Source: Macrostomum lignano | Lineage: Eukaryota | NCBI GenBank assembly: GCA_002269645.1 | Contig: NIVC01003348.1 | Coordinates: 1 to 47,949, forward strand | Length of the DNA: 47,949 bases | Reading direction: 5' to 3' | Made by a program: the position numbers and the translations under genes | The notes under the pieces: model-generated | What the model was told of the DNA's origin: nothing | The model's input: the letters and a program-made list of their open reading frames with translations, nothing else | The model's database searches: none | Part shown: positions 1 to 17,700 of the stretch, piece by piece | Position numbering within the stretch: position 1 is the first letter of the stretch | How the letters are laid out: the number at the start of each line of letters is the position of its first letter

Positions 1-1828
1 GGTACAGATTAAAAGTCACAAAAGCAATTAAAATGGTGAATTGAAAACAAGTAAAAATACAATTTTAATAAGTGCAAAAATACTCAATTGTATAAATATA
101 TAATGCATCATACCCAGTCATTGCATGGAAAGACTTAGTTAATGCAATAATGACTAAGTTGCTCATTGCTTGGTAAAAAGCTTGCTGTCAATTGATCCTT
201 TGCTAGCCAATTACTAGTTTAGAATTGGCTTAATCCAGGAAGATTCAAGACCCAGGTTAGCTTGCACAATGATAAATAGCATGCGTTGATAACAGTGGCA
301 GAAAAAGATAAATTTAAAAGGGTTATAGTTTATAGTTGAGTTTTTAATAATTTCAAATTTATAAGTAAAAAGAATTAGATAATAAAAAATAAAGAAAGAA
401 TAATTCTACTTTAAAACATTTATAAACAAATTATCTATAAGCTATACAAATTCAATAGCTTAGCCTTAGGCTCAAATATGTAGGCTAAGGCTTAGGGGCC
501 TAGGGCCTAATCTCAAGGCAAAATAAAAAGATTGGAATGCCAATTTTATAAAACTTCTAACTTCTAAGTAAACTAACTCTATTTTTAAATCTATTAGGCC
601 TAGGCCTAATCCAATTTTTGAATATGATATAATAAATTAGGCCTAGGCCTATATATAGCCATTTTAGGCTATCTATTTTTTATTTTAATTTTCATTGGCC
701 TAGGGGCCTAGCCTTTAGACAATGGCACCTATAATATATATAGTATATTGAAAGCATATGTACATTGCCATTAGCCACTAATAAAGGCAAAGAAAAAGGC
801 AAAAGCAATAATATAGGCTTAAGCCTAAGGCTTAGCCCAAGGAAATTATTTAATTTTGACTTAAAAAATCAAAACAAAATTTTTAGGCTTAAGGATAGAG
901 CTAAGAGGCCTACAAAAAATTAGTCTTGATAAGCCAATCAATAGGCCTAGCTATAAAATTCTAACTTTAAATAAAAAACCAGAAGTAAGTAAATAAAACA
1001 CTTTATACTTATAGGCCATAGTTAAAGCCTGAATCTTTTAAGGCCTAACTTATATTTTAGTTTAGTCTAATTTAAAATTATAATTTGGAAATCAGGATAT
1101 TACAATTCTATTGCACAAATATATAAAACTATATTCTGGGTTCTTTGTTTGCACCTGGCATTAGGATGGGAAATCAAATCCTGGAAGCTATCCAAGGAAG
1201 GACTAAGTAAAAGACTAGGAAGGTCTAACTTGAGGATAGTAAATGTAAATCATCACTAATACACTATCACAGTAAGTAAGGATAAACCTAGGGTAGGGCT
1301 TAGGCCAGAAATCTATATAGGCTATAGCAGCCAATGAAAAATCGAAACTTATCACACAAGATAGAAACAAGTGTTCGACAATTAGGCCCCTAATCATTAA
1401 TTGATGATCATTAATCATGCCCGGGGGGTTGTCTTTAGTTCTTTTTAAAAATGATGTTCCGCATTTTGTTTTTGGCTGTTTTGAACAAAAGCATCACCGA
1501 TAAGAATATATATTGCATCTTTGTCTATTTTTAATTCTGAGATGTTTAGATTTTTGTAAATATTTTTACCATCATCAATATTGTTGTAATTAAACTTTGT
1601 CTTTAAGTTTATAACGACCCAATATAAAAAATTGCATATATTGCGCTTCAAAAAAGCTTAAAGGGTTATTTAAAATAAGCAAACCTTCCACAGACTACAA
1701 TTCAACGAAAATTAGCGATAAACGTCACAATAGTGCTTGATTTTCTTTTTTATCGATTTAGTGATCTGGATAAATTTGTATCTGAAATTTCCTACTTACA
1801 GTAGAAACAGTAGTTTATGTAATTTTTT

Positions 1829-2022
1829 GTCTTTAAGGTGATGTCTTAAAGATGTCTTAAACAAGACATCTCACAAAAGTCAATTTTAAGTCATCTTGAA
1901 GACAGCTTCGTCAGGATGGCTTGTAGAAGCAAAGTTAAAGATATCTTGAAATTGTCTTGAGGTGTCTTTAGCCATCTTAAGACAATTATAAGATGTCTTA
2001 AGACAACTTCTTTTTGATCGGG
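1829..2022. repeat. Cluster of GATGTCTT/AAGACATC-type motifs ending in TTTTTGATCGGG; possibly one end of a non-autonomous DNA transposon
   Basis: Many short direct and inverted copies of the motif. No matching opposite terminus or TSD found. Confidence 0.35.
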
Positions 2023-3511
2023 TTGTAGGTCGGACATGACATTTGACTTCTCATCCACAGGAAATCTGATTTCTCAATGGCATTAATCGCTTGCTGCTGC
2101 CTCTGTTGATTTACTTTATAAATTTTGTTTTTAGCTACGTCATTCAGTATTTTTTATTTTGATAGTTTGCAGCATTTTACTTGCTGATAATAAATGATGA
2201 TGAAAAATAGGTGATGTAATGCTGAGCAGTGCAATTATTACAATGTCAACAGTAGCATCTTAAGGATTATATCAAATAAAATACAAATTATAAACGCGCT
2301 TTAAGCTGTGAAAGCTATCCCAGCGAACAAAATAAAAGAATTTTTTAACGGTTTATTTAGAACGGCTTTCGTAATTTCTTATTTCATTAACGAAAAATCC
2401 GCGCAGTTTGAGTCACATGATTTCCTTGAAAATGGGCACACTCCGCCGCCGCCAACAATTAATGTCTTGTCAACATCACCAGTGACCCAGTTAAAGTTAT
2501 GCCTGGAGGCTAGAGCCCAGAAATAATTCACATAGTTATGTTAAAAATTTCAGAAATAAGTTATAATTTAACCAATAAATATCGTTAAAGACAATCACTA
2601 ATACATAATATTAGGATTTCTATTTCTAATCTATTATAAATTCAGATTTCAGAGTAGAGGTTGTAACTCGAAGTTAAAATTTATGAAGTAATATTAGAAA
2701 TATGTTATTTTAGTTTTCAGGTTTGTATTTTTATCTAATTGCCATCTCAAACAAATATCGAATAGGCCCCTAAGCTAAAATTAAAGCAAATATTTAAAAA
2801 TTTTAAGACATTTCAATTCATAAAAAGTCATCATCAAAAAGTCATGAAAGTCATAAAAGTCATCATAAAAAAGTTTTTTTGATAATACATATTTTTAGAA
2901 ATTTAAAATAGCCATTAGGCCTAATTTGTATTTTTTATAGTTTGATAAAATTAAAATATATAAATTTGCAACTGCAGCTTGCAATCTAACTATTTAACAA
3001 GAAATCCAAGGTAGATATTTGCAAAAACCCTATATATTAAAAATGAGTTGTCTTTGTGTGTATATGTGTGAGATAGATTTCAGAAAAAATGGCTCAACCA
3101 ATTTTCTTCAAACTTGCACCATTCAATTAGAAATTTTCTAGGACAGTATATGCAATGCATATTGGCTAGGCCCCCTAAGAAATTGCTCAATTTTAAAGGG
3201 ATTAAATATTAAAAAACATGCTTTTTTGCAAAGGTCAAGCAGCTCTTTCAACCTGAAATGCATTGTAAGAATGCTAGAGAAAAAACTAACTGGCTGAATT
3301 TCAATTGTGATAAAGATTGCATCAGAACAAGTTAAAAACAGTGTCAAAAAATATAGACATGACTTGATTGAAATTGCGCAACCATATTGCTAATTTAAAT
3401 TGAGACTAATACTGGCTAACTGAGAAATTGATTATGTCACAACTTTTTGCTCTAACCAACTTATAAAAATTGAATTATAAGGGCCAAAATTCATGTTCTT
3501 CAATTAAAAGA

Positions 3512-4293
3512 GATAGCCCAGATGCAAAGGTCTGCGGTCATTTTGTCTGCCGCCTTTTCATCTGCCAAAGAATTTTAGCAGACAAAACGACTTTTTTATT
3601 TATGTTTATTTTGGTTCACTTATTTAGTATTTTTTATGTAGGGAATTAAAATAAATTAGTACAAGCAAGTAAGCAAGTTTTAAGTATGTTTTCTTATTTA
3701 TATTGATACATTTTGTTTTTCTTCATTTTCCATGAAACCTAACTAACCTATATAATACTTTCGACGCATCGATGCGAAGTTATTTTCTGAGAAAGTGGTG
3801 TTATTGATAATTTTCAATTATCAATTATTCATAATTGCATATGAGTTTACATTTTCTGTGCCTACAATTTCAATTGCTCCTTACATTTTACACTTTGTGC
3901 ATTTAAGCTACTTGTATTCGTGAATAAATTGCATATGAGTTTACATACACGAAAAAAAAGAAAGTTGGAAGGAAACTAAACGGTTGGAGATATTTGCTTC
4001 TGGCTTTGTGTATTTATATGCAACATATTAGCTCCGGAACTTTCAGAAAAATCCTAGCATTATAATAAATTATAATTAATAAGACGTTTACATTACACTT
4101 CCATGCAAAGCTTGATGACATAATTAGTTATTCCGATTTATATATTATATATATTGGCAGACGAAACGACTATATCGTATATTGGCAGACGAAAAGGCGG
4201 CAGACGAAAAGGAGGCAGACGAAATGACTGTCAACCGATGCAAATAGACTAGACTACTAATGTAGTGACCTGGGTTTGAATCTTAGTAGTGCA
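3512..4293 (+). mobile_element. Possible decayed tRNA-derived SINE head, split by the 3529-4236 insertion
   Basis: The reconstructed empty site carries an A-box-like TAGCCCAGATG (3514-3524) and a B-box-like GGTTTGAATCT (4273-4283) at tRNA-like spacing. Confidence 0.35.
3529..4236. mobile_element. Non-autonomous DNA transposon (MITE-like) with imperfect TIRs and an 8-bp TSD
   Basis: GATGCAAA flanks both ends (3521-3528 and 4237-4244). The left end GGTCTGCGGTCATTTTGTCTGCCGCCTTTTCATCTGCCA mirrors the reverse complement of the right end GGTTGACAGTCATTTCGTCTGCC...GCCTTTTCGTCTGCCA. Subterminal GGCAGACGAAA repeats; no ORF. Superfamily not determined. Confidence 0.75.
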
Positions 4294-4790
4294 AAATGAT
4301 TTTTTATTAAAATACCTTAAAATACAAAATGGTTTGACATAAAAGAAGCACAATGTCAAACATAAAAAGCCACCATGTCAAACATAAAAGAGCCACCATG
4401 TCAAGCATAAAAAGCCACTATGTCAAACATAAAAAAGCCACCATTTCAAGCCTAAAAGAGCCACCATGTCAAACATAAAAGAGCCACTATGAAGAACATT
4501 AAAGAGCCACCATGTCAAACATAAAAGAGCCACTATGAAGAACATTAAAGAGCCACCATGTCAAGCATAAAAAGCCACTATGTCAAACATAAAAAAGCCA
4601 CCGTTTCAAGCCTAAAAGAGCCACCATGTCAAACATAAAAGAGCCACTATGAAGAACATTAAAGAGCCACCATGTCAAACATAAAAGAGCTACCATATTG
4701 AACATTAAAGAGCCATTGTTGATATCGAAATAGAATTGCGGTAGAGAAGCACTCTTAACAGATAATAGTAAGACAAAACTCAATATTATT

Positions 4791-4828
4791 TGCGACGCGT
4801 TTCGGCTAAAACTAGCCATCTTCAGGCA
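4791..4828 (-). ncRNA. Minimal type-I hammerhead ribozyme (PLE-type)
   Basis: Minus strand reads UGC-CUGAAGA-U-GGCUA-GUUU-UAGCC-GAAAC-GC-GUC^GCA: core boxes, 5-bp stem II, palindromic ACGCGU stem III, 3-bp stem I, GUC cleavage triplet (cut between 4794 and 4793). Confidence 0.8.
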
Positions 4829-5110
4829 CTATCGAACAGAATTTATTTCAACCTATTAAATACTGTGTAGACGACAAAATCAGGTATTGAAAAGATATAA
4901 AAGGACTAAAGGATCAATGTACAGTATAGCAATGTTCATAATATTATTTGTGGAATGACAGGACAGAGAAAAAAGAGAAAGAGAGAGAGAGAGAGAGAAT
5001 GAGGCGTATGCGCCCCAAATGTACTCTAGCTTAGAACACAACAGCTGTTCACTCGCACCTCCTCCAGATAGTTGGACATTGAGAGTGGGTTTGTGTTGGG
5101 GCGCATACGC

Positions 5111-5147
<37 letters not shown>

Positions 5148-5287
5148 CTCTGTCCTGTCATTCCACAAATAATATTATGAACATTGCTATACTGTACATT
5201 GATCCTTTAGTCCTTTTATACCTTTTCAATACCTGATTTTGTCGTCTACACAGTATTTAATAGGTTGAAATAAATTCTGTTCGATAG

Positions 5288-5325
5288 TGCCTGAAGATAG
5301 CTAGTTTTAGCCGAAACGCGTCGCA
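5288..5325 (+). ncRNA. Minimal type-I hammerhead ribozyme, second copy with an A.C mismatch at the base of stem II
   Basis: Plus strand reads UGC-CUGAAGA-U-AGCUA-GUUU-UAGCC-GAAAC-GC-GUC^GCA (cut after 5322). Confidence 0.72.
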
Positions 5326-5748
5326 AATAATATTGAGTTTTGTCTTACTATTAAAGAGCCACTATGTCAAACATAAAAGAGCCACCATGTCAAACATAAA
5401 AGAGCCACCATATCAAACATCAAAGAGCCACAATGTCAAACATAAAAGAGCCACTACGTCAAACATAAGAGAGCCACCATATCAAACATAAAAGAGCCGC
5501 CATATCTAACATAAAAGAGCCATCACATCAAGCATAAAAGAGCTACCATGTTAAACATATAGTAACTTTATGTCAAACATTAAAGAGCCACCATGTCAAA
5601 CATAAAAGAGCCACCATTTCAAACATAAAAAGCCACCATGTCAAATATATAAGATACACAATTTCAAACATAAAAGTAAGCATCATGCCAATTTTATAGG
5701 AGCCACTATAAAGCTAAGGAAATTGTTGCACTAGCTACTTATTGTTTA

Positions 5749-5810
5749 AGCTTGCTATCTGGGAGATGCTTGCTATCTGGGGATGCTTGCTATCTGGGGG
5801 ATACTTGGGA
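5749..5810. repeat. Short ~18-bp tandem repeat (GCTTGCTATCTGGGGAT), about 3 copies
   Basis: Seen directly. Confidence 0.8.
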
Positions 5811-6161
5811 TGATTTCTTTTTGCATTGCACTTCATTTGAGCAGTTTGTCTATTGTCTTTGTGAAGGCCTTTTTTGGCTATCTTTTTGTTACTTGTAGAG
5901 AACAAATATTCTATCCAGATGTCCCCCATTGGAAGGCAAAAATTGCTAGTCCTATATACTAAAATTAATTAACTAAATACTAAAAACTTATAGAAATATT
6001 ATATAGGAAAAGCAAAAAGCAAAAAGCAAAAAGTGACCTTTTGATCCCAATAATACTTAGACTGAAAAAACCCTAGTAGGAGAAAAATAATACATAAGAT
6101 ATGATAAAGTAGTGTCATAAACTGCTTAGGTCAATAGTACATTCATGTTACTAGCAAATAT

Positions 6162-6339
6162 GCGCAACCTAAGGATAATACATATTACATAATACATATC
6201 ACCCAGCCATTTCTATTGGCAACATATACATGTAAGATGCTATTGGACAAAATAGTTATCTTGTGATTGCTCTCAGCCAATAGCAACTTACATGTGTGTG
6301 TTGCCAATAGAAATGGCCAGGTGAATCCCTAGGTTGTGC
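6162..6339. repeat. Palindromic element (47-bp arms, 30-bp spacer), MITE-like relic
   Basis: 6200-6246 is the near-exact reverse complement of 6277-6323. The outer sequences GCGCAACCTAAGGAT and ATCCCTAGGTTGTGC also pair if a 22-bp insert on the left is ignored. Confidence 0.7.
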
Positions 6340-7868
6340 TTAAGCATGGCTACTAGCTTTATATATTATATTAAGAAAGCCTTGTTAAGTTATAATAAAT
6401 CGGCGTTTATTGAGTTTTGAGAAAGATAGCAAAAGAAGGGGTTAACACATAATTTAGCACTGGCATAGCTCAAACAAAACTTAGTGGTACAGGTAAGGGA
6501 GTCGAAGACCATAGATATAATTAAGAAGTCTGTTATAGAAAATTCTAGAAGGAAAACTTGGATTCACTTACTATAAATATCAAGTTGACTATTTTAAGAT
6601 AAATGATTACTAACATTGTTAACATATTACACTACTAATACAAGGTATAGCATAAAAAATACATTAAGATTTTGCATTAGTATGATCATTTTAGAAGACA
6701 GAACTATTAGCCTTTTAACAACTTGATGGCAATCTTTGGGATTTGAAAAGAGAAAGGATTATACCCTTTCAATAGCTTTGTGGCATCAATAAGATAGTTT
6801 TAAAGGCAGAACTAATATCATTTTTATCAAAAAATAAAATGAAGAAAATAAGAAAAAGTAGAAAAATAAAGAGATAAAATAATATTAAAAAACAAACAAG
6901 TCATAAAAAATCGCATTGAATATTTAAGCCAAAAGGAAAAAGATTTAATTTGTATATATAATAAATCATATTAATATAAAATTCTCTCTAGATATAAATA
7001 TATTGAAGTGGGCAGTAGCTACTGCATGCAGACTTGAAATTGTATTTGCGGAGAGCAAAAGGTTCTTACAAGCGTCTGCACACAATCAGGTTAAATAGGC
7101 CAACACACTAGTTAGTCAATCAACCCCAACCCCCACGTAGCTCAGGCTAGGTGGGCAAACCCCCACCCCTAATCTCTGGGGTTGGTGGCGCATAGATGCG
7201 GCATGATGAGCAGTTGAGTGCAAGGGCATCTAAATGGCCGTCTTCAGGTGCGCTTGCACTTGTCCGCCACAATATCATATTATTTGCTGGTCAAGCAATC
7301 TAACTATCATTGGTAAAATTTAGGTTGTGTATATATAAGATAAAATATATGCTTTTGATACATAAACTATTTTTAGCTTTGCATATATGATTCAAAAAGG
7401 CCTTTCATTTTAGCAAATGCATGGCTGTATATTAGTATAATATTAAATTGTAATTTTATTGATGTTGTTTCATATATATTTATTTAAAAAAATAGGCCTG
7501 GTATATAGAGTATATACAATTTCTTTCCTAAATTTTCTATTAAAATTTGTTTAATTGCACTCAAAATTTCAGTTTTTTATATAATAAATCCTGAAATTAG
7601 AATGTACTTCTTTGCTGGTGAGGTCTGCTTTAGGATTTTACATATTTTGTTATTCTTGTTGCTTGTTAATATAGTTTTTTTCATCCTATTTGGGCCTATA
7701 TGCATTTAATTTTATCCAAGATAAGTTTGCCAATGTAATGGAACTTATGTCTATGGTAGCAAGGCTGGTACAGTGGCATTTAATTTGGTCCAACAAGCAT
7801 CAATTCAGTCCATAGCTTCATTTGCAACAGTTGTGGTGGAGCAGATCAGCCCTAGAATTGTGGACCAT

Positions 7869-8031
7869 ATGCTACGCTGTTGAATGAATGCCATTAACTT
7901 GTGATCAAAGCACTGGAAAGAGGTGAACACCAAAAGGACATTGCAAGGCTGTTCAATGTAAAAGAAAGATGGTTTACAGCATCCAGCAGCACTTTGAAAC
8001 CACTGCCAGCAGAGGTTGCCTGCAAAAAGAA
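7869..8031 (+). pseudogene. Decayed Tc1/mariner-type transposase N-terminus (HTH plus GRPR-like motif)
   Basis: LVIKALERGEHQKDIARLFNVKE, then after a 1-nt frameshift MVYSIQQHFETTASRGCLQK. Reversing CpG decay gives TVYSIQQRFETTASRGRPRK. An in-frame TAA lies at 7895. Confidence 0.55.
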
Positions 8032-8924
8032 GATATTTTTTTTGTTGACATTGTATAAAGTGCAGCAGAATTTGAAGAAGACAGGCAGAAAAAATCTACA
8101 GTTGTTTATTTTGTTCTGTTTCATTTTTTGCAAAATTGTAAGTTTGTATAAAAGTTTGCAACAATAATAATTTTTATTCTCTTGACTTTAAACTACTTAA
8201 AAATACTTTAAGGTGTCGAAAATTTATTGCCTTTAAAGTAAAAGAATGTATCCTTTTCTTGATATATCACACTTAGAGCACTTTTCATTTTTAAGAAGTC
8301 AAGCATTCAGTTTAGGACATAATCAACTATATTCAATCAGATAGAAATTCATATTCGTTCTTATAGTTGGACAAATTGGACAAATAAAACCAGAAGCCAG
8401 CCATTAATGTACCTTAGTGCTTAAGGTACTTAATGTCTGCTTTCTGTCTTGGTGTTTGAGAACTTGAGTGCATGTATTTCTCTTACCCCAGTCTTTCTGA
8501 AGAGTACACAGTTGTGTATGCTCTTAGGGTAGAGGGGTAGACGAAAAATCTCATTGGTAATGTACCGTTAATCTCTGATTTTCACTTATCGTTTACTCTC
8601 ATACAGTTGTTGCTATGTATAGTATTAGTTATTTTGAAACACAGTAAGTAGAGAGAGCAGCTGTTGCCCTTATAGTGTAGCTCAGTACAGCTTACTTTTT
8701 GTACTTTTTCTCTTGACTGTCATGTATTATGTTCTTTATGGTTTAGTGCACTGTGGGGGCGGTTTTTACCTGTTTTTCTGGGAATTTATTCCAAATTGTT
8801 TTGCAGCTAATTATCTAGCTGAATTAGTTTAATATTCTGGCTCCCAATGGTTTCATAACTGTTTTAGTCTATTTCTTTGCATAATCCATTTTATCGTGAC
8901 TTATTAAGGTTATATATCAGCTTC

Positions 8925-9060
8925 TCCACACCCACCCCCCAGTTCCACTCTTACACCTCCCTCCCCCTCTTACATCTCCCTCCCCCCTCTCACATCTCCC
9001 TATCTCCCTCCCACCTCTTACCTCTCCCTCTTCCCCTATCTTACATCTCCATATTCATCC
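8925..9060. repeat. Degenerate C/T-rich ~19-bp repeat (CTCTTACATCTCCCTCCCC)
   Basis: Several diverged copies about 170-300 bp upstream of the DOP1 ATG. Confidence 0.6.
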
Positions 9061-9195
9061 ATAGCATCGTCTGTTTCTATATCTCACAGTTACGTGTTTC
9101 TAATATTTACATTTAGCCCTGTTATTTGTCACTGAACAAAAACCGTTCTTATTTAGATTTAGTATAAGTGACGTCAATGACAGTGACAAGAATTT

Positions 9196-9223
9196 TTCAT
9201 TTCAATTTCATCAATAATTTCAG
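9196..9223 (+). promoter_or_regulatory. 3' splice acceptor 11 nt upstream of the DOP1 start codon (5'-UTR intron or trans-splice acceptor)
   Basis: T-rich tract followed by AATTTCAG|ACCCGCCAAGTATG. Confidence 0.55.
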
Positions 9224-9234
9224 ACCCGCCAAGT

Positions 9235-9761
9235 ATGTTGAATCCATTCGAGGACGAGTCCTCAATCAGGGCTCTAGAGAAGGAGCGTCGCTATAGAAAC
9301 TACAGCTCGGATATGGAGAAGATCCTGCGCCAGTTTGAGAACACATCAGACTGGGCGGATACTATACCTCTGCTGGTTCGCTTAACAAAGACTATCATTG
9401 CTAATAGGCAATACGAACTGATTCCGCACAAATTGATGCTATGCAAACGTCTGGCCCAGTGCCTGCATCAGAATATGCCTAGCGGTGTGCACGAGAAAAC
9501 GCTAGAATGCTATTCGGCCGTATTCTCCTGCGTACAGCGTACCGATTTAAAGTGCAACTTGCACTTGTACCTGTTCGGATTGTTGCCGCTGTTTGCTTAT
9601 TGCGGTTCGACTATTCGGCTGCCTTTGATTTCGTTGTACGAAGAATTTGTGCTGCCGTTGGGGCCCGCCTTGAGGCCATGCCTGCCCGGCCTGTTGCTGG
9701 CACTGCTGCCGGGGATGGAGGAGACCTCCGATCATGTGGATCGGGTGGGACAGCTGCTCAG
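9235..9761 (+). CDS. DOP1: DOP1 coding exon 1 (Dopey_N)
   Basis: ATG at 9235; donor CTCAG|GTGATT at 9761/9762; phase 2, and AG+G re-forms the Arg codon with exon 2. Confidence 0.93.
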
Positions 9762-11682
9762 GTGATTGAGACTGGCTGATGGCAGACATCGAGACAGGCT
9801 AATGGTAGACATCGAGACATGCTAATGGCAGACATTGAGACTGGCTGATGGCAGACATTGAGACTGGCTAATGGCAGACATTGAGACTGGCTGATGGCAG
9901 ACATTGAGACTGGTTAATGGCAGACATTGAGACTGGCTAATGGCAGACATTGAGACCGGCTAATGGCAGACATTGAGACTGGCTAATGGCAGACATTGAG
10001 ACTGGCTAATGGCAGACATTGAGACAGGCTAATGGCAGACACACATACTGGCTAATGGCAGACATTGAGACTGGCTAATGACAGACACTGAGACAGGCTA
10101 ATGGCAGACACACAGACTGGCTAATGGCAGACATTGAGACTGGCTAATGGCAGCCATTAATAAGACAAGCTAATGACAGACACTGAGACAGGCTAATGGC
10201 AGACACACAGACAGGCTAATGGCAGACATTGAGACTGGCTAATGGCAGACATTAAGACAAGCTAATGACAGACACTGAGACAGGCTAATGGCAGACACAC
10301 AGACAGGCTAATGGCAGACATTGAGACTGGCTAATGGCAGACATTAAGACAAGCTAATGACAGACACTGAGACAGGCTAATGGCAGACACACAGACAGGC
10401 TAATGGCAGACATTGAGACTGGCTAATGGCAGACATTAAGACAAGCTAATGACAGACACTGAGACAGGCTAATGGCAGACACACAGACAGGCTAATGGCA
10501 GACATTGAGACTGGCTAATGGCAGCCATTAAGAGAAGCTAATGACAGACACTGAGACAGGCTAATGGCAGACACACAGACAGGCTAATGGCAGACATTGA
10601 GACTGGCTAATGGCAGATATTGAGACCGGCTAATGACAGACATCGAGACTGGCTAATGGCAGACATTAAGACAGGCTAATGGCAGACACTGAGACAGGCT
10701 AATGGCAGACACACAGACAGACTAATGGCTGACAATAAGACAGGCCAATTAGCAGACACTGACTGAGACAGGCTAATGACAGACTCAGGCAGGCTAGTGA
10801 CAGACATTGAGACTGCGACATTAAGGCGGGCTAGTGTAGACCTGAGTTAGATTAAGTAGACAGACAGACATTGATAAGAGTTATGTCACAATATGTCACA
10901 GCATGCAGACCTCACTAATCTGGCTCAATCGCAGGTCCATCTCCAAAGCTGTGAGTCCTCCAGTGTTCTTCACCGGGCTCTGGCGGGTCCTGTCCGATTC
11001 TCCCAGCGTCCGCCTCACCGGCCTCAACTTTGTCCTGGCCTGCTACGATAAACGAAAATCGTTGGACGATCAAGACGATTTAATGGGCCAAGTGTTGGGC
11101 AATCTGATGGACAGTCTGTGCGCTGTGCTGGCCGATCACAATACACTGGTGCAGAGACAGGTTCGTTTGTAGTAGTATCAGTAGTACTTGTATTAGTAGT
11201 GGTAGTAGCAGTAGTAGTACTAGTACTTGTATTAGTAGTAGTATTAGTAGTAGTAGTATTAGTAGTAGTAGTATTAGTAGTAGTAGTATTAGTATTAATA
11301 GTAGTAGTAGTTGTAGTAGTAGTATTCAGTAGTATTAGTAGTGGTAGTAGTAGTAGTATTAGTAGTATTATTAGTAGTGTTAGTAGTAGTATTGGTATTT
11401 GCCAACTCCAATCTTATTTACTCTTGTCTTGTAACTTTACTTTAGTCTTGAAATTCCTTAAGATATAAAAGTACAGTTTTCAGAAGTCCAACCCGTCCAC
11501 ACACTCTGATCCAAACTCTCATCAGGCCCTGGAATTCCTGCTCAATGCGTTCCCGTTGAGCGCCAGTCGCCTCGGCAGCGACGACTTGGCCAGACTGTGC
11601 GCTGCCGCTTTTAACATTTTGTTAAAACGCGACGCCTCTTTGAATCGGCGCTTCTACGCCTGGTTGCTAGGCAACAGTCCCA

Positions 11683-11719
<37 letters not shown>

Positions 11720-14700
11720 AGTTCAAGATGACGCCGCCTCTGCCGCTTCCTCAGCTGGCGGAGGCACCGCTTCTAACAATCGATTTGTTGGCCGAAGCGT
11801 CTGCATAGCGGCCTATCGAATATTTGCCAATCAGAAGGCTGCAGATCCTGTGCCTGCTTTTCGAGTGCTGCAGTCTCTTATTGAGAGGCCGGTTGTTGGA
11901 CAACAGGTGAGATTTGTTGAACAGGTACATCATGAAAGACTGGCTTATCTGGGGTTTGAGCCTACACGATTATCCCCTACTCTTGATTTAGGAGATTATC
12001 ATAAACGATTAGGGAGATCATCCTAAAGAATTCGGGAGATTATCGTAAAGGATTTGGAAGATACTCCTGAAGGATTGGGGAGAGATTACCGAAAAGGATT
12101 TGGGAGATCGTCCTAAAGTATTTGGGAGATTATCCTAAAGGATTTGGGAGATTATCCTAAAGGATTTGGAATATACTCCTGAAGGATTGGGGAGATTATC
12201 GAAAAGGATTTAGGAGATTGTCCTAAAGTATTTGGGAGATCATTTTAAAGGATTTGTGAGATTATCCTAAAGGATTTGTGAGATTATCCGAAATTTTTTT
12301 TGGAATTATCCTAAAAGATTAGGGAAATTATCCTAAAGGATCAGGGAGACTATCATAAAGTATTAATTTGGGAGATTATCTTAGGATTAGTGAGATTATT
12401 CTTAGAATCGGAAGTGGATTGGCCCTTACAAATCAGGGATTAGCTAATTATTAAGGATTATCCTATAATAGTTCCTAAATTTGTTTTAGTTAGCAATCAG
12501 AGGTGTATATATATTTGTTAACAATAATATCCAGATCGTCTCAGACACGCTGTTAACTGCGCTACGCCTTTGGCGCGATGCACCAAATCCGGAGGACGCC
12601 TCAGCCTCGATCGGTCACCTACTTAGCAGCCTTGATGGCGCTTTCCTTTGTCGGTTCTTTGCCGACCTACTGGCTTCCGACTGGTCCCGCTGCGAGGAGC
12701 TGTGCTCGCTGGCTAGAATGGCTCATAATCGATGCTTAGCTAACGATTGGACTCCGTTGCTATTGCGTCTGCTTCGGTTAGTAACTAATCGCCTGCCGGA
12801 GACCAGTCCAGGCATGCTGGAAGCCGCTATTCGACTGGCTTCGGAGCTGCTGGCCAGCGCCGCCTCTGAGCCGTTGGATCCTAGGATTGTTCAAGCTTGC
12901 AGACTGGCTTATCTTCGATTGTGCCTCACTAAACTGGGATTGGACCGAACTGTGCTGGCTAATGCGCCAGCCAGATTGAGGTCGGATTCTACTGAGGGAG
13001 GTCACGTGACCCTGGCGGATAGCGGTGTAGCTTTTGCCGCAGCGTTGGAATCTCTGCTAGCTCTGCTAGGCCGGGTGGCCGCGTGCCCTCTGCGCGACGT
13101 CAATAATGGATTGGGAATTGAAGATGATTCTGAGGACACCAATGACGAGGGCAAGGATGATGCTGATCTTGACGATGAGGAAGAGAATGCTGACCTGCCA
13201 GCGCCTCGGTGGGTGCTGGCTCTGCTGGTGAGTGTTTGTGTCTTTGATCGATTTTAGTTGAGCAGTGTGGGATTTTCGTTGAGCAGTGTGGGATTTTCAT
13301 TGAGCAGTATGGGATTTTAGTTGAGCAGTGTGGGGTTTTAGTTAAGTAGTGTGAGATTTTAGTTGAGCAGTGTGGATTTCAGTTGAGTAGTGTGGGATTT
13401 TAGTTGAGCAGTGTGAGATTTTCGTTGAGCAGTGTGAGATTTTCATTGAGCAGTGTGGGATTTTAGTTGAGCAGTGTGGGATTTTAGTTGAGCAGTGTGA
13501 GATTTTAGTTGAGCAGTGTGGGATTTTAGTTGAGCAGTGTGAGATTTTAGTTGAGCAGTGTGGATTTCAGTTGAGCAGTGTGGGATTTTCGTTGAGCAGT
13601 GTAGGGTTTTAGATAAGTAGTGTGGGATTTTAGTTGAGCAGTGTGGATTTCAGTTGAGCAGTGTGGGATTTTCATTGAGCAGTGTGGGATTTTAGTTAAG
13701 TAGTGTGGGATTTTCATTGAGCAGTGTGGGATTTTAGTTGAGCAGTGTGGGGTTTTAGTTAAGTAGTGTGAGATTTTAGTTGAGCAGTGTGGGAATTAAG
13801 TTGAGCAGTGTGGGATTTTAGTTGAGCAGTGTGGGAATTAAGTTGAGCAGTGTGGGATTTTAGTTGAGCAGTGTGGGATTTTAGTTGAGCAGTGTGGGAT
13901 TTTAGTTGATTAGTGTGGGATTTTAGTTGAGCAGTGTGGGATTTTAGTTGAGTAGTGTGGGATTTTAGTTAAGCAGTGTGGGATTTGAGTTGAGCAGTGT
14001 GGGATTTTAGTTGAGCAGTGTGGGATTTTAGTTGAGTAGTGTGGGATTTTAGTTAAGCAGTGTGGGATTTTAGTTGAGCAGTGTGGGATTTTAGTTGAGC
14101 AGTGTGGGATTTTAGTTGAGTAGTGTGGGATTTTAGTTGAGCAGTGTGGGATTTTAGTTGAGTAGTGTGGGATTTTAGTTAAGCAGTGTGGGATTTTAGT
14201 TGAGCAGTGTGGGATTTTAGTTAAGCAATGGGGGATATAAACTTGAGCAGTGTGGGGAAATAAACTTGAGCAGTGTGGGGAAATAAACTTGAGCAGTGTG
14301 GGGAAATAAATTTGAGCAGTGTGGGGATTTGTGTTTATACCTATCCTAATCTTCATCAATGCTCAGGTGAGCAGCTGTTTTGTCCGCGAGACCAGCATCC
14401 GTCATCCGAGTACTCGAGCCCTTCTAGAACTGCTCGCAGCCGCTCAGTGCCTCACCGCAGCCGATGCTAGCCACGAATTCGAAGCCGATTCTACAACCGC
14501 CGTCGCTTCCTCAAATCAATCGGCATCTGCAGCCTCTACTAAAGTCGTAGCGGTTTCATTTCCAACTCTTCCGCCAGTGGCCCTTGCCTGGCTTCAATCT
14601 AGCCAACTTTATTGTCTTCTAGGAGAGGCGCTCTGGTCAGATTTGGCGCCAGGCGCCGAACCGGCTGATCAACGCGCCGCGGCGAGTCTATTCGCCGAAC

Positions 14701-17700
14701 TGTGCCAATCGGTGCCGGAAATCTGCGAAGATTTGTTGCTAAGGAAACTGGGCAGCGAACAGGGCGATCAAGCTGATGCTCATAAAAGATTCGCATCGCT
14801 ATGGCTTCTGATGAAGCCGGATCGGGCGCCTCAGCTGCCCAGATGCCTGCTAGCTCTGTTACATTTTGTCGGCTCAGGACACGCCTTGGAGAAGATAGTA
14901 GTGGATTGGGCTGAGCACGCGATGAGAATGGGACAGCTGCATCGACTGTTGAATCCATTGTTAGCTCTGCTGCTGTCTCCGAAAGCTGCTCGGCTCAGCG
15001 TCGATAGAATTGCCGAGGAAGCGTCCGCTAAAAATGGCTCATCGGCGAATGGCGGCGGCGGCGCGTCCACGTCGCGTTGGGATGTTGAAGAGGCGCGAAT
15101 TGTCGGTATTGAAAGCGACGGCACTGGGAAGGTAAGATAGGGTGAGATTTTGAGTTTTCTTAGCTTTCAAGGTGAGATTTTGGAGATTTCTTAGCTTTAA
15201 GGATGAGATTTTGGAGATTTCTTAGCTTTCAGGGTGAGATTTTGGAGATTTCTTAGCTTTAAGGGTGAGATTTTGATATTTCTTAGCTTTAAGCGTGAGA
15301 TTTTGAGATGGCTTAGCTTTAAGGGTGAGATTTTGATATTTCTTAGCTTTCAGGGTGACATTTTGAGATGACTTAGCTTTAGGGTGAGATTTTGACATCT
15401 CTTAACTTAAAAAAATTTTTGAGATCTCTTAGCTTTAGGAGTGAGATTTTGAGATTTCTTAGCTTAAAGAGTGAGGTTTTGAGATTGCTTAGGTCTAAGG
15501 GTTAGATGTTGTGATCTCTTAGCTTTAAGGGTGAGATTTTAAGATCTCTTAGCTTTTGGAATGAGATTTTGAGATCTCTTAGCTTTCAAGGTGAGACTAA
15601 GTGAGATTTTAAGATTGCTTAGCTTTAAGTTTGAGATTTTGAGATCCTGTATGCAATATGAGTATGGGTGAGATTTTAAGATTGCGTATTCAGTAGTGGT
15701 GGGATGTGACCTTTTGTAATTATTCAGCAACTTTATCCCAAATCCTTCTAAATCGTGACTATCAACGCCTTAATCCCCCATAATCTCAGGTAATCTATCG
15801 GGTCAACCAGTCGCCAGCCAGGGCCACCGACGGCACCAGCAATCATCAGGCATCTTCGCTAGCAAATCCATCGTCAAGCGGCTCTTCGGGCACCGCTTCA
15901 TCGGCTGGAAGGAGTCGATCAGCTGTTCAACTGTTGGCCACCGCCACCTCGGCTGCGCCAGTGCGGTTGCTAGGCGGCGGCGCCTCATCAGCATCTGCAG
16001 CTTCATTCCGATTGAGAATCAACCCGCTAGACGAAGCCTCGGTCAACGAGACGGATACGGACTCCATCGAGGCTAACTCTATTGAAGATAAAAATGTTGC
16101 AGATACTACTGAATCAGCTGCTGTTAGTAGTAGTAGCAATAGTAATAGAGAAGCGACTCCAACGCCGCCTGCTCGTGTGGCTTCATCTGGAGTTCTGTGC
16201 CCCAGCCCCGAGGCCGTGTCTGTTGTCAACGACATTATCGAAGAATTGATCACAGCCTCTTTGGCTCAAGTTGAGCGAAGCGTGCATCCGCTGTTTTCGC
16301 ACATGTGCCTGTACAATCGAAAGATTGATTGTTTGCAGGTAGGATTCTGTGGCTATGGTCCTTTATTGGGCATTGATGGGTCCTCTTGGCTATGGTCCTT
16401 TATTGGGCATTGATGGGTCCTCTTGGCTATGGTCCTTTATTGGGCATTGATGGGTCCTCTTGGCTATGGTCCTTTATTGGGCATTGATGGGTCCTCTTGG
16501 CTATGGTCCTTTATTGGGCATTGATGGGTCCTGTAGCTATGGTCCTTTATTGGGCATTGATGGGTCCTCTTGGCTATGGTCCTTTATTGGGCATTGATGG
16601 GTCCTGTAGCTATGGTCCTTTATTGGGCATTGATGGGTCCTGTAGCTATGGTCCTTTATTGGACATTGATGGGTCCTGTAGCTATGGTCCTTTATTGGGC
16701 ATTGATGGGTCCCTGGCTATGGTCCTTTATTGGGCATTGATGGGTCCTCTTGGCTATGGTCCTTTATTGGGCATTGATGGGTCCTCTTGGCTATGGTCCT
16801 TTATTGGGCATTGATGGGTCCTCTTGGCTATGGTCCTTTATTGGGCATTGATGGGTCCTGTAGCTATGGTCCTTTATTGGGCATTGATGGGTCCTCTTGG
16901 CTATGGTCCTTTATTGGGCATTGATGGGTCCTGTAGCTATGGTCCTTTATTGGACATTGATGGGTCTCTGGCTATGGTCCTTTATTGGCATTGATGGGTC
17001 CTCTGGCTATGGTCCTTTATTGGACATTGATGGTCCTCTTGGCTATGGTCCTTTATTGGGCATTGATGGGTCCTGTAGCTATGGTCCTTTATTGGGCATT
17101 GATGGGTCCTCTTGGCTATGGTCCTTTATTGGACATTGATGGGTCCTGTAGCTATGGTCCTTTATTGGACATTGATGGGTCCTCTTGGCTATGGTCCTTT
17201 ATTGGGCATTGATGGGTCCTCTGGCTATGGTCCTTTATTGGGCATTGATGGTCCTCTTGGCTATGGTCCTTTATTGGGCATTGATGGGTCCTGTAGCTAT
17301 GGTCCTTTATTGGACATTGATGGGTCCTGTAGCTATGGTCCTTTATTGGACATTGATGGGTCCTGTAGCTATGGTCCTTTATTGGACATTGATGGGTCCT
17401 GTAGCTATGGTCCTTTATTGGACATTGATGGGTCCTGTAGCTATGGTCCTTTATTGGACATTGATGGGTCCTTGTAGCTATGGTCCTTTATTGGACATTG
17501 ATGGGTCTCTTGCTATGGTCCTTTATTGGACATTGATGGGTCCTGTAGCTATGGTCCTTTATTGGACATTGATGGGTCCCTGTGGCTATGGTCCTTTATT
17601 GGACATTGATGGGTCCTCTTGGCTATGGTCCTTTATTGGGCATTGATGGGTCCTCTTGGCTATGGTCCTTTATTGGCATTGATGGGTCCTCTTGGCTATG

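What the first reader, a model, noticed from the sequence alone, without database searches (positions are those of the whole stretch)
4791..5325. Pair of oppositely oriented hammerhead ribozymes inside a ~590-bp fold-back
Seen: two copies of UGC-CUGAAGA-U-[stem II]-GAAAC-GCGUC-GCA, one per strand, near the outer ends of ~256-bp inverted arms. Known: Penelope-like elements carry minimal type-I hammerheads with a palindromic stem III that are thought to cleave as dimers. Inference: a read-through transcript from either strand makes the antisense arm first and the ribozyme last, so it would either fold into a ~256-bp dsRNA hairpin that traps the ribozyme (a possible endo-siRNA source against the family) or be cut at its 3' end into a defined hairpin RNA. 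Neither the ORF track nor gene annotation shows this.
Basis: partly seen in the sequence, partly recalled or inferred. Interest (0 to 1): 0.85.

Follow-up and report, generated by a model that had tools for sequence, protein, structure and literature searches.

The report
Head-to-head truncated Penelope element insertion
The fold-back is a single aborted insertion of a Penelope-like retrotransposon: two inverted, 5'-truncated copies that each carry the family's usual minimal hammerhead motif, a well-described hallmark of these elements, so the finding is real but ordinary.

Summary
Inverted arms 4763-5018 and 5096-5353 are about 99% complementary. Each carries UGC-CUGAAGA-U-stem II-GAAACGCGUC-GCA, at 4791-4828 (-) and 5288-5325 (+).

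The arms are the 3' ends of a young Penelope-like element (PLE) family whose long copies encode RT plus GIY-YIG. Window 4716-5096 is one contiguous minus-strand copy and 5096-5353 a plus-strand copy. They are joined head-to-head, and the 77-nt "loop" is ordinary PLE sequence. An 8-bp target-site duplication (AAGAGCCA) flanks the pair, and only one end has the 27-nt PLE "tail".

About 17 independent insertions in this genome have the same layout with different junctions, so the fold-back arises at integration and is not a mobile unit. Motif pairs genome-wide are oriented (-,+) in 20 of 21 cases.

Stems I and II covary between PLE subfamilies, which supports a genuine minimal type-I hammerhead. 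Helix III (ACGCGU) can form only in a dimer of two sense copies, which a fold-back transcript lacks. The plus copy also has G10.1->A.

A read-through RNA would fold into a -461 kcal/mol hairpin. Cleavage is therefore unlikely. siRNA production is possible, has precedent and is untested here. All of these features are already published for PLEs.

The parts
4708..4715 (.). Left copy of the target-site duplication, AAGAGCCA, within the 23-bp satellite (9 bp if A4707 is counted)
   Evidence: Read. The same octamer follows the right arm at 5354-5361. Other insertions of the family have 7-13 bp TSDs.
4716..4735 (-). 20 nt that follow the tail in a head-to-tail tandem unit (sense TTCTATTTCGATATCAACAA; codons 38-44 of the PLE ORF). 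The template therefore extended into the next unit.
   Evidence: The same 20 nt follow the tail in the tandem copy on L035 and continue there into the RT ORF.
4736..4762 (-). 27-nt PLE 'tail' (sense TCTGTTAAGAGTGCTTCTCTACCGCAA), present on this arm only
   Evidence: Alignment of 32 arms. Exactly one arm of a pair carries the tail in 15 of 16 pairs.
4763..5018 (-). Left inverted arm: the last 256 nt of the PLE before the tail, minus-strand copy
   Evidence: maps to L032 4815->4550.
4791..4828 (-). Intact minimal type-I hammerhead motif UGC-CUGAAGA-U-GGCUAGUUUUAGCC-GAAACGCGUC-GCA. Predicted cut between 4794 and 4793. A9-U-G10.1 (4819-4817) is the ORF start codon.
5019..5095 (-). The 'loop': a further 77 nt of the same minus-strand PLE copy (end of the ORF and start of the 3' region), absent from the shorter plus copy
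   Evidence: blastn shows 4736-5096 contiguous with L032 4842->4472 at 96%.
5096..5353 (+). Right inverted arm: plus-strand 5'-truncated PLE copy with no tail. The head-to-head junction at 5096 has a 1-nt overlap.
   Evidence: L032 4550-4815.
5288..5325 (+). Hammerhead motif with G10.1->A at 5299. This breaks the G10.1-C11.1 pair and turns AUG into AUA. Predicted cut between 5322 and 5323.
5354..5361 (.). Right copy of the target-site duplication, AAGAGCCA
4337..4715 (.). 23-bp satellite, left part of the array the element inserted into
5353..5676 (.). 23-bp satellite, right part of the same array

Best explanation
The 4716-5353 segment is the footprint of one failed ('dead-on-arrival') integration of a recently active Penelope-like retrotransposon of the Penelope/Poseidon type. 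It inserted into a 23-bp satellite about 4.4 kb upstream of a DOP1/dopey gene.

Shown: it consists of two 5'-truncated copies of the element's 3' region joined head-to-head with their 3' ends facing outward. An 8-bp target-site duplication brackets the pair, and the 27-nt tail (here plus 20 nt of the next tandem unit) is on one end only. Each copy includes the family's minimal type-I hammerhead simply because that motif lies 30-65 nt upstream of the point where reverse transcription starts. In this family the motif also contains the ORF's start codon.

Inferred: the GIY-YIG endonuclease made a staggered double-strand break. Both 3'-OH ends primed reverse transcription on PLE RNA, at two alternative internal start sites (hence one tail). 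Both cDNAs stopped after about 260-380 nt and were joined by a template jump or end joining, which created the inverted repeat.

The hammerheads are passengers here. They need a second sense copy to build helix III, which a fold-back lacks, and one is mutated. If the locus is transcribed by read-through, the RNA would be a long near-perfect hairpin. That is a possible Dicer substrate, but it would be a by-product of the insertion and no such role has been shown.
For: Identity as a PLE:
- Long family copies carry a 751-aa frame with RVT_1 (E=9.6e-12) and GIY-YIG (E=8.7e-5).
- More than 500 homologues of about 800 aa have the same domains.

Structure:
- Window 4736-5096 is contiguous with L032 4842->4472, and 5096-5353 with L032 4550-4815.
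- About 17 independent loci show the same (-)(+) layout with different junctions.
- Loci that share a junction also share 3-kb flanks at over 99%, so they are assembly duplicates and not transposed units.
- There is one tail per pair in 15 of 16 pairs, with TSDs of 7-13 bp.
- 20 of 21 neighbouring motif pairs genome-wide are (-,+) and none are (+,-). This is the orientation expected if both break ends prime cDNA synthesis.

Hammerhead:
- 366 pattern hits against 16 for the control.
- In the 17-subfamily alignment, 89% of cells are paired against 19-31% when the partner is slid. Five of 8 pairs change on both sides, and 0 of 500 shuffles reach the observed score.
- The ORF begins at A9-U-G10.1, with the cut site 26 nt downstream, as in Anolis PAc (PMC11167929).

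Literature:
- An inverted 5'-truncated copy and a tail at one end are typical of PLEs (PMC8557442).
- Head-to-head is the commonest arrangement (PMC3846280).
- The PLE protein cleaves and extends both strands and uses two RT start sites that delimit the tail (PMC11167929).
Against: - No expression, RNA-end or small-RNA data are available, so 'no function after insertion' is a default and not a result.
- Within this family the hammerhead is no more conserved than the rest of the arm (0.41% against 0.43% substitutions). Support for the ribozyme comes only from comparisons between subfamilies, and the pattern search fixed the core by construction.
- Rfam hammerhead models give no hit.
- The dual-end priming step is inferred from footprints and from one in vitro study. 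A self-priming (snap-back) model has also been proposed (PMC3846280).
- Truncation points of the two arms are only loosely similar (median difference 136 nt against 263 nt when permuted, P about 0.01, n=17, ascertainment-biased).
Confidence: 0.88

Rival explanations
1. The fold-back acts as a hairpin-RNA (endo-siRNA) source. Read-through transcription gives a roughly 256-bp dsRNA that Dicer processes into siRNAs, which silence the young PLE family in trans.
For: - The predicted hairpin is -461.5 kcal/mol with z = -55.
- The arms are 95-99% identical to long copies that still have open frames, so siRNAs would match them.
- Precedent: siRNAs mapping exactly to Penelope inverted repeats in transformed D. 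melanogaster (PMC3681739).
Against: - There is no evidence of transcription. The locus lies in a satellite upstream of the nearest coding exon.
- The arrangement is fully explained as an insertion by-product that recurs at about 17 or more loci, so nothing singles out this copy.
- In the cited Drosophila work such siRNAs did not silence the element efficiently (PMC3681739).
Confidence: 0.15
2. The inverted repeat was made by self-priming (snap-back) of a single cDNA or antisense template, not by priming from both ends of the break.
For: - This was proposed for A. vaga PLEs from palindromes at inverted junctions (PMC3846280).
- Truncation points of the two arms tend to be similar, as expected if one arm is copied from the other.
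Against: - The two arms end differently at their outer 3' ends, tail against no tail, in 15 of 16 pairs. A simple copy-back would not produce this, whereas it matches two RT start sites (PMC11167929).
- The window junction has only a 1-nt overlap and no palindrome.
- Many pairs have junction offsets of 100-2000 nt.
Confidence: 0.25
3. It is a non-autonomous element that moves as a fold-back unit (MITE or Foldback-like DNA transposon, or a retrozyme-like hammerhead element).
For: It has long terminal inverted repeats, a short unit and a TSD. Retrozymes are thought to derive from PLE pLTRs (bioRxiv 10.64898/2026.07.22.740005).
Against: - No two loci with different flanks share a junction.
- The arms are unequal and asymmetric at both ends.
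- Retrozymes are direct tandem repeats, whereas here the copies are inverted. Only 1 of 21 nearby motif pairs is direct.
Confidence: 0.02
4. The fold-back is an assembly artefact.
For: Contig C3348 is itself a giant palindrome: window 1-18268 is mirrored at 67382-49069. PLE inverted repeats are known to trouble assemblers (PMC8557442).
Against: - The same 722-bp structure, flanks included, is present on a separate 1-Mb contig, C100, at 99.2%.
- The same architecture with TSDs recurs at about 17 independent loci.
Confidence: 0.02

Closest known systems
EN+ Penelope-like elements (Penelope/Poseidon type) with an inverted 5'-truncated copy and a one-sided tail (Evgen'ev & Arkhipova 2005; Arkhipova et al. 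2013, PMC3846280; Craig et al. 2021, PMC8557442)
   Same: - RT plus C-terminal GIY-YIG ORF with a DKG motif.
- Heavy 5' truncation and head-to-head inverted copies.
- A 27-nt tail at one end only, and TSDs of about 8-13 bp.
- A partial tandem is needed for a complete ORF.
- Insertion into simple or tandem repeats.
   Different: Nothing structural. This is a species-specific young family: the best public protein hits are about 40% identical. The window copy has no coding capacity. In the window the tail-bearing arm also includes 20 nt of the next tandem unit.
Minimal hammerheads of metazoan PLEs (Cervera & de la Pena 2014, PMC4209133; Lunse, Weinberg & Breaker 2017, cited via PMC6765202)
   Same: - Type-I topology and CUGANGA/GAAA/UH boxes.
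- An unpaired nucleotide between A9 and G10.1, and a conserved G10.1-C11.1 pair.
- A short helix I of 3-5 bp, and a palindromic 15.2-16.2/loop 3 that forms helix III only in a dimer.
- Many covarying consensus families per genome.
- Pairs on opposite strands 100-700 bp apart.
   Different: No cleavage assay was done here. Rfam hammerhead models do not score it.
Anolis carolinensis Poseidon element PAc (PMC11167929)
   Same: - The ORF starts at the beginning of hammerhead stem II, and the cut site is 26 nt after the AUG.
- The tail lies between two RT start sites, and both target strands are extended.
   Different: PAc was studied biochemically, whereas here there are only genomic footprints. 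Other PLE subfamilies in this genome have the AUG followed quickly by stops, so the overlap is family-specific.
Non-LTR retrozymes (Cervera & de la Pena 2020, PMC7229834; bioRxiv 10.64898/2026.07.22.740005)
   Same: Short non-coding sequences carrying type-I hammerheads that are related to PLE pLTRs.
   Different: Retrozymes are direct tandem repeats that give circular RNAs. This is a single inverted pair that cannot place two sense ribozymes on one transcript.
Hairpin-RNA / endo-siRNA loci formed by inverted transposon copies, including Penelope inverted repeats in transformed D. melanogaster (PMC3681739)
   Same: A long, near-perfect inverted repeat of an active transposon family, with the potential to give dsRNA.
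   Different: There is no expression or small-RNA evidence here.

Membership tests
Hammerhead ribozyme (minimal type-I, PLE type) | Conserved core boxes C3-U4-G5-A6-N7-G8-A9 and G12-A13-A14, and a cleavage triplet N-U-H | tested here: met
   Both copies have CUGAAGA, GAAA and GUC. Of 32 family arms, 2 have GUC->GUU and the rest are intact.
Hammerhead ribozyme (minimal type-I, PLE type) | Helix II closed by G10.1-C11.1 and supported by covariation | tested here: met
   - The minus copy has GGCUA/UAGCC.
- Across 17 subfamilies helix II is 96.7% paired, and 3 of its 4 pairs change on both sides.
- The plus copy fails this feature: A5299 gives an A.C mismatch at 10.1-11.1.
Hammerhead ribozyme (minimal type-I, PLE type) | Helix I formed by the 5' and 3' flanks (type-I topology) | tested here: met
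   UGC/GCA in the window. Subfamilies have GCC/GGC, ACC/GGU, AGC/GCU, AAC/GUU and GCUC/GAGC. Helix I is 76.5% paired, with 2 of 3 pairs changing on both sides. The helix is short and weak.
Hammerhead ribozyme (minimal type-I, PLE type) | Helix III, here only through the palindrome A15.1-CGCG-U16.1 in a dimer | tested here: inconclusive
   ACGCGU is self-complementary. A modelled homodimer with a 6-bp helix III is -21.9 kcal/mol, against -1.5 for the monomeric hammerhead fold. This is energetics only, and the fold-back offers no second sense copy in cis.
Hammerhead ribozyme (minimal type-I, PLE type) | Site-specific self-cleavage | not testable with these tools
   This needs in vitro transcription of monomer and dimer constructs. 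Published PLE minimal hammerheads cleave poorly even as dimers (PMC4209133).
Hammerhead ribozyme (minimal type-I, PLE type) | Match to the Rfam hammerhead covariance models | tested here: not met
   No hammerhead hit at gathering score or at E<=10 over 4700-5420. These models require a helix III hairpin, so this does not exclude the minimal class.
Penelope-like element, EN+ canonical | Single ORF with a reverse transcriptase followed by a C-terminal GIY-YIG endonuclease | tested here: met
   RVT_1 at residues 286-474 and GIY-YIG at 651-734 of the 751-aa frame on L032. The DKG motif is present, and there is no CxxC linker motif upstream of the EN domain (read), as in Penelope/Poseidon. The window copy itself has no ORF.
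Penelope-like element, EN+ canonical | pLTR / partial tandem organisation with the hammerhead in the repeat | tested here: met
   L035 has a truncated copy, then the tail, then a unit whose ORF starts in the upstream hammerhead. A homologue from another organism (L067) has direct hammerhead motifs on both sides of its ORF.
Penelope-like element, EN+ canonical | Adjacent inverted 5'-truncated copy, an optional 30-40-bp tail at one end, and a TSD | tested here: met
   In the window: 27-nt tail at 4736-4762 and TSD at 4708-4715 / 5354-5361.
Non-LTR retrozyme | Direct tandem repeats of about 170-400 nt, each with a type-I hammerhead | tested here: not met
   The two copies are inverted. Only 1 of 21 nearby motif pairs is direct, and that pair is 2.7 kb apart.
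MITE / Foldback DNA transposon | The same TIR-bounded unit repeated at unrelated sites | tested here: not met
   Every independent locus has a different internal junction. Identical junctions occur only where the flanks are also identical.

The most novel reading that the evidence does not exclude
The fold-back, like the dozens of similar ones this family leaves behind, is transcribed by read-through and yields endo-siRNAs. Under this reading, the PLE's own error-prone, two-ended integration would automatically seed RNAi against the family early in an invasion. The footprints here (one tail per pair, exclusively outward-facing 3' ends, loosely matched truncation points) would then be in vivo evidence for concerted priming from both break ends.
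Probability: 0.15. Interest if true: 0.35.

Novelty: new member of a known kind. Interest (0 to 1): 0.15.

Why it matters
It matters mainly for annotation. The locus should be masked as a truncated PLE insertion and not reported as a ribozyme gene or a microRNA-like hairpin; Rfam gives sub-threshold plant-miRNA hits on its GA/TC-rich stem. The family is young (copies are about 0.4% from their consensus) and abundant. Its footprints form a clean natural data set that agrees with the two-start-site, both-strand priming seen in vitro for one lizard PLE. If small-RNA data exist for this species, these fold-backs are obvious places to look for transposon-derived siRNAs. None of this changes current understanding.

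Tried and rejected
- Rfam scans, at gathering score on the whole window and at E<=10 on 4700-5420, found no hammerhead. The only hits were sub-threshold miRNA and snoRNA models (MIR2118 56 bits against a gathering score of 85, and others). These align to the GA/TC microsatellite hairpin and are rejected as compositional.
- Within-family conservation test: the hammerhead has 5 substitutions in 1216 nt and the rest of the arm 18 in 4178. The family is too young for this to be informative, so between-subfamily covariation was used instead.
- A mobile fold-back unit is rejected, because shared junctions always come with shared flanks.
- A retrozyme is rejected on orientation.
- The start codon inside the hammerhead does not explain the conserved bulged U in general. 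It holds for this family, but in other subfamilies the AUG runs into stops within 10-15 codons (read).
- Four cross-species homologue contigs were scanned. One (L067) has a clean direct pair of minimal hammerheads around its ORF, one (L066) has a hammerhead-like motif 3' of the ORF, and two had none under my pattern. This is corroborating but thin.
- Lunse et al. 2017 could not be read and is cited only through a review.
- The host organism was not identified. The only named hit was a coral (Stylophora pistillata) protein at 32% identity, which does not indicate the host.

Full report
**1. Is it there?**

Yes. The repeat finder reports inverted arms 4763-4998 and 5118-5353 (236 nt, 99% complementary). 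A 54-nt continuation through a GA/TC microsatellite extends them to 5018 and 5096. This gives arms of about 256 bp, a 77-nt centre and an outer span of 591 bp.

The pattern CTGANGA-N8-30-GAAACGCGTC matches exactly twice, at 4794-4825 (-) and 5291-5322 (+), and never in 100 shuffles. With their UGC/GCA flanks the motifs occupy 4791-4828 and 5288-5325.

The two copies differ at one base. The plus-strand copy has A5299 where the minus-strand copy and the family consensus have G.

**2. What are the arms?**

A search of the window's own genome with the right arm returned at least 48 arm copies at 92-100% identity. The genome is 764 Mb in 5,269 contigs, which is eukaryote-sized. The copies usually lie as a (-) copy followed by a (+) copy, 0 to 3.3 kb apart.

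The long copies carry an open frame of up to 751 aa. [quoted passage not shown] More than 500 database proteins of about 800 aa share this architecture. The best are only about 40% identical, so this particular family is not itself represented in the protein collection searched.

**3. Anatomy of the window copy**

blastn against a long natural copy (L032) gives the following:
- Window 4736-5096 is one contiguous minus-strand stretch, matching L032 4842->4472.
- Window 5096-5353 is a plus-strand stretch, matching L032 4550-4815.

The "loop" of the fold-back (5019-5095) is therefore just 77 more nucleotides of the longer copy. The two copies meet head-to-head at 5096 with a 1-nt overlap.

At the outer ends the copies differ. 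The plus copy stops at ...CTTACTATTA (5353). The minus copy continues with the 27-nt sequence TCTGTTAAGAGTGCTTCTCTACCGCAA (4762-4736) and then 20 more nucleotides (4735-4716).

On locus L035 those same 20 nt follow the tail in a head-to-tail tandem and run on into the RT ORF. The RNA template for the window copy therefore extended into a downstream tandem unit.

The whole insert is bracketed by AAGAGCCA (4708-4715 and 5354-5361). It lies inside a 23-bp satellite that spans 4337-4715 and 5353-5676.

**4. Is the fold-back a unit, or made afresh each time?**

I mapped 41 fetched loci onto the L032 coordinate system. About 17 independent insertions have the same (-)(+) head-to-head layout. Their internal junctions all differ, with truncation points ranging from L032 coordinate 2283 to 4715.

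Where two or three loci share a junction, they also share more than 3 kb of flanks at 97-99.8%. This applies to the window, C3348 at about 62 kb, and C100 at about 274 kb. These are duplicated loci or redundant assembly, not transposition of a fold-back unit.

Further footprints:
- In 15 of 16 pairs exactly one arm carries the tail.
- Pairs are flanked by 7-13-bp target-site duplications.
- Among the first 100 genome-wide motif hits, which span several PLE subfamilies, 21 neighbouring pairs lie within 5 kb. Twenty are (-,+), one is (+,+) and none is (+,-).

Each fold-back is thus a single integration product.

**5. Comparison with published PLE structure**

This is the published structure of PLE insertions:
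- Craig et al. [quoted passage not shown] - Arkhipova et al. 2013 call head-to-head "the most frequently observed" arrangement and report 8-10-bp TSDs (PMC3846280).
- Cervera & de la Pena 2014 already noted [quoted passage not shown] (PMC4209133).

The 2024 biochemical study of the Anolis element PAc found that the protein cleaves and extends both target strands. It also found that reverse transcription starts at two adjacent internal sites whose spacing equals the tail (PMC11167929).

Priming from both ends of a staggered break predicts what is seen here: 3' ends facing outward, one tail per pair, and a TSD. I therefore favour that route. It remains an inference. A self-priming model has also been proposed (PMC3846280).

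The truncation points of the two arms are closer than expected by chance, which either model could accommodate. The median difference is 136 nt against 263 nt on permutation (P about 0.01, n=17), and the sample is ascertainment-biased.

**6. Is the motif a real hammerhead?**

The pattern occurs 366 times in the genome against 16 for the reversed control. The hits fall into at least eight subfamilies with different helix II sequences: GGCUA/UAGCC, GCAC/GUGC, GUCC/GGAC, GGUC/GACC, GGCC/GGUC, GGUU/AACC and others.

I fetched 18 loci from other subfamilies and aligned 17 distinct motifs with 8-nt flanks. On the hammerhead structure:
- 89% of cells are paired, against 19-31% with the 3' partner slid by 1-3 columns.
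- Five of eight pairs show changes on both sides.
- None of 500 shuffles reaches the observed covariation.
- Helix I covaries as well: UGC/GCA, GCC/GGC, ACC/GGU, AGC/GCU, AAC/GUU, GCUC/GAGC.

The invariance of the core boxes in this set is imposed by the search pattern and counts for nothing.

Several other features match the features that Cervera & de la Pena list as evidence that these motifs are not random (PMC4209133): the unpaired U between A9 and G10.1, the conserved G10.1-C11.1 pair, the 3-5-bp helix I, and the palindromic 15.2-16.2 segment.

Two caveats apply:
- Within the window's own family the motif is no better conserved than its surroundings (0.41% against 0.43%), because the family is too young. 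Four of the five substitutions are CpG transitions.
- Rfam's hammerhead models do not detect the motif, as expected for a motif without a helix III hairpin.

**7. Would the ribozymes work in this fold-back?**

Probably not, for four reasons:
- GAAACGCGUC leaves A15.1-U16.1 and C15.2-G16.2 around a 2-nt loop, which cannot close.
- The monomer hammerhead fold scores -1.5 kcal/mol. The best monomer folds (-8.3 and -4.8) are no better than shuffled sequence.
- A homodimer pairing ACGCGU with ACGCGU scores -21.9, but this needs two sense copies. Any transcript through the fold-back contains one sense copy and its exact complement.
- The full 591-nt RNA folds into a near-perfect hairpin of -461.5 kcal/mol (z = -55), with the ribozyme strand paired throughout.

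In addition, the plus-strand copy has lost the G10.1-C11.1 pair.

Published minimal PLE hammerheads cleave only weakly even as dimers (PMC4209133). In PAc the ribozyme was dispensable for insertion in vitro, and no RNA-seq reads ended at its cut site (PMC11167929).

The first alternative, a dsRNA hairpin that traps the ribozyme, is what thermodynamics predicts if the locus is transcribed at all.

Whether such RNA feeds RNAi cannot be tested here. There is precedent: siRNAs in Penelope-transformed D. melanogaster mapped precisely to rearranged inverted-repeat copies, though they did not silence the element efficiently (PMC3681739).

**8. A detail worth recording**

In this family the ORF begins at the AUG formed by A9, the bulged U and G10.1. 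It then runs, without a stop, through the rest of the hammerhead, the arm end, the tail and the 5' region into the RT domain.

The cut site is 26 nt after the AUG, exactly as described for PAc (PMC11167929). A complete ORF therefore exists only across a tandem junction, which fits the known need of PLEs for more-than-unit copies.

The A5299 change in the window's plus copy destroys this AUG as well. In other subfamilies of the same genome the corresponding AUG is followed by stops within 10-15 codons. The overlap is therefore family-specific and does not by itself explain the conserved bulge.

**9. Context**

The insert lies about 4.4 kb upstream of the first Dopey_N-coding exon of a DOP1-like gene on the plus strand. 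The Pfam evidence is PF04118 with E=1.8e-55 at 9187-9765, and TPR_DOP1 at 45991-46716. No long open frame lies upstream of 9187, so the insert is probably in the gene's upstream region.

**10. Verdict**

The structure as a whole is the ordinary, well-documented footprint of an abortive PLE integration. It is neither a new RNA device nor a new element type. It is a new family member of a known kind, of low interest beyond annotation.

Noticed in passing
window 1-18268 versus G000:C3348:67382-49069; also G000:C100:262000-278000: Contig C3348 is a giant palindrome. The first 18 kb of the window recur in reverse orientation at 49-67 kb of the same contig at 98.4-99.7% identity, with the 36-bp satellite array between the two halves. 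A third copy of the region (97.9-99.4%) lies on the 1-Mb contig C100. This is probably a fold-back or haplotig assembly artefact, though a real inverted duplication is not excluded.
   Followed up: partly
window 16347-45186: A 29-kb array of about 805 copies of a 36-bp unit (CTGTAGCTATGGTCCTTTATTGGACATTGATGGGTC, 95% matches). It lies between exons of the DOP1-like gene and fills 60% of the window.
   Followed up: no
window 9187-16413 and 45991-46716 (+): Exons of a DOP1/dopey homologue (Dopey_N E=1.8e-55; TPR_DOP1 E=5e-10). Its introns are packed with different minisatellites: 23-bp at 9765-10813, 22-bp at 11985-12364, 21-bp at 13250-14330 and 30-bp at 15138-15596.
   Followed up: partly
L035 (G000:C728) minus strand from + coordinate 2105 leftward; window 4819-4817 and 5297-5299: The PLE ORF starts at the AUG made of hammerhead A9, the bulged U and G10.1. 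It stays open through the tail into the RT domain for at least 702 aa, and the ribozyme cut site is 26 nt after the AUG, as in Anolis PAc. A complete ORF therefore exists only across a tandem junction.
   Followed up: yes
L042-L059, 15-70 nt downstream of each hammerhead; window equivalents 4757-4777 and 5330-5345: Otherwise divergent PLE subfamilies share a box (A)TGTTGATTTTC about 15-25 nt after the cut site (window family: ATATTGAGTTTTGTC). They also share a second box, AAGCG(A/T)GC(A/T)AC(C/T)TTACC, which corresponds to the tail (window family: TAAGAGTGCTTCTCTACCGCAA). These may be RT-initiation or endonuclease-recognition signals.
   Followed up: no
17 independent head-to-head pairs (loci L004-L040 and the window): The 5' truncation points of the two arms of a pair tend to be close (median difference 136 nt against 263 nt in permutations, P about 0.01; Spearman 0.67). 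This hints that the two cDNAs stop or are joined in a coordinated way. The sample is small and ascertainment-biased.
   Followed up: partly
alignment of 32 family arms, hammerhead columns: Four of the five substitutions inside the hammerhead are CpG transitions in or next to the CGCG palindrome. This suggests CpG methylation and deamination of these copies.
   Followed up: no
window 4966-5149: Rfam plant-miRNA and snoRNA models (MIR2118, MIR529, MIR408, MIR533, snoR125) give sub-threshold hits with E as low as 3e-10 on both strands. The hits are driven by the (GA)n/(TC)n part of the hairpin stem and are compositional false positives.
   Followed up: yes
L067 (ENA ERZ27314247 contig, 3215 bp) positions 210 and 2844: A 40%-identical PLE homologue from another sample has two direct minimal hammerheads, CUGAUGA-G-GGUUU...AAACC-GAAAUC, flanking its 822-aa ORF. 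Helix II differs from the window family and there is no helix III at all. This is the classic pLTR layout.
   Followed up: partly
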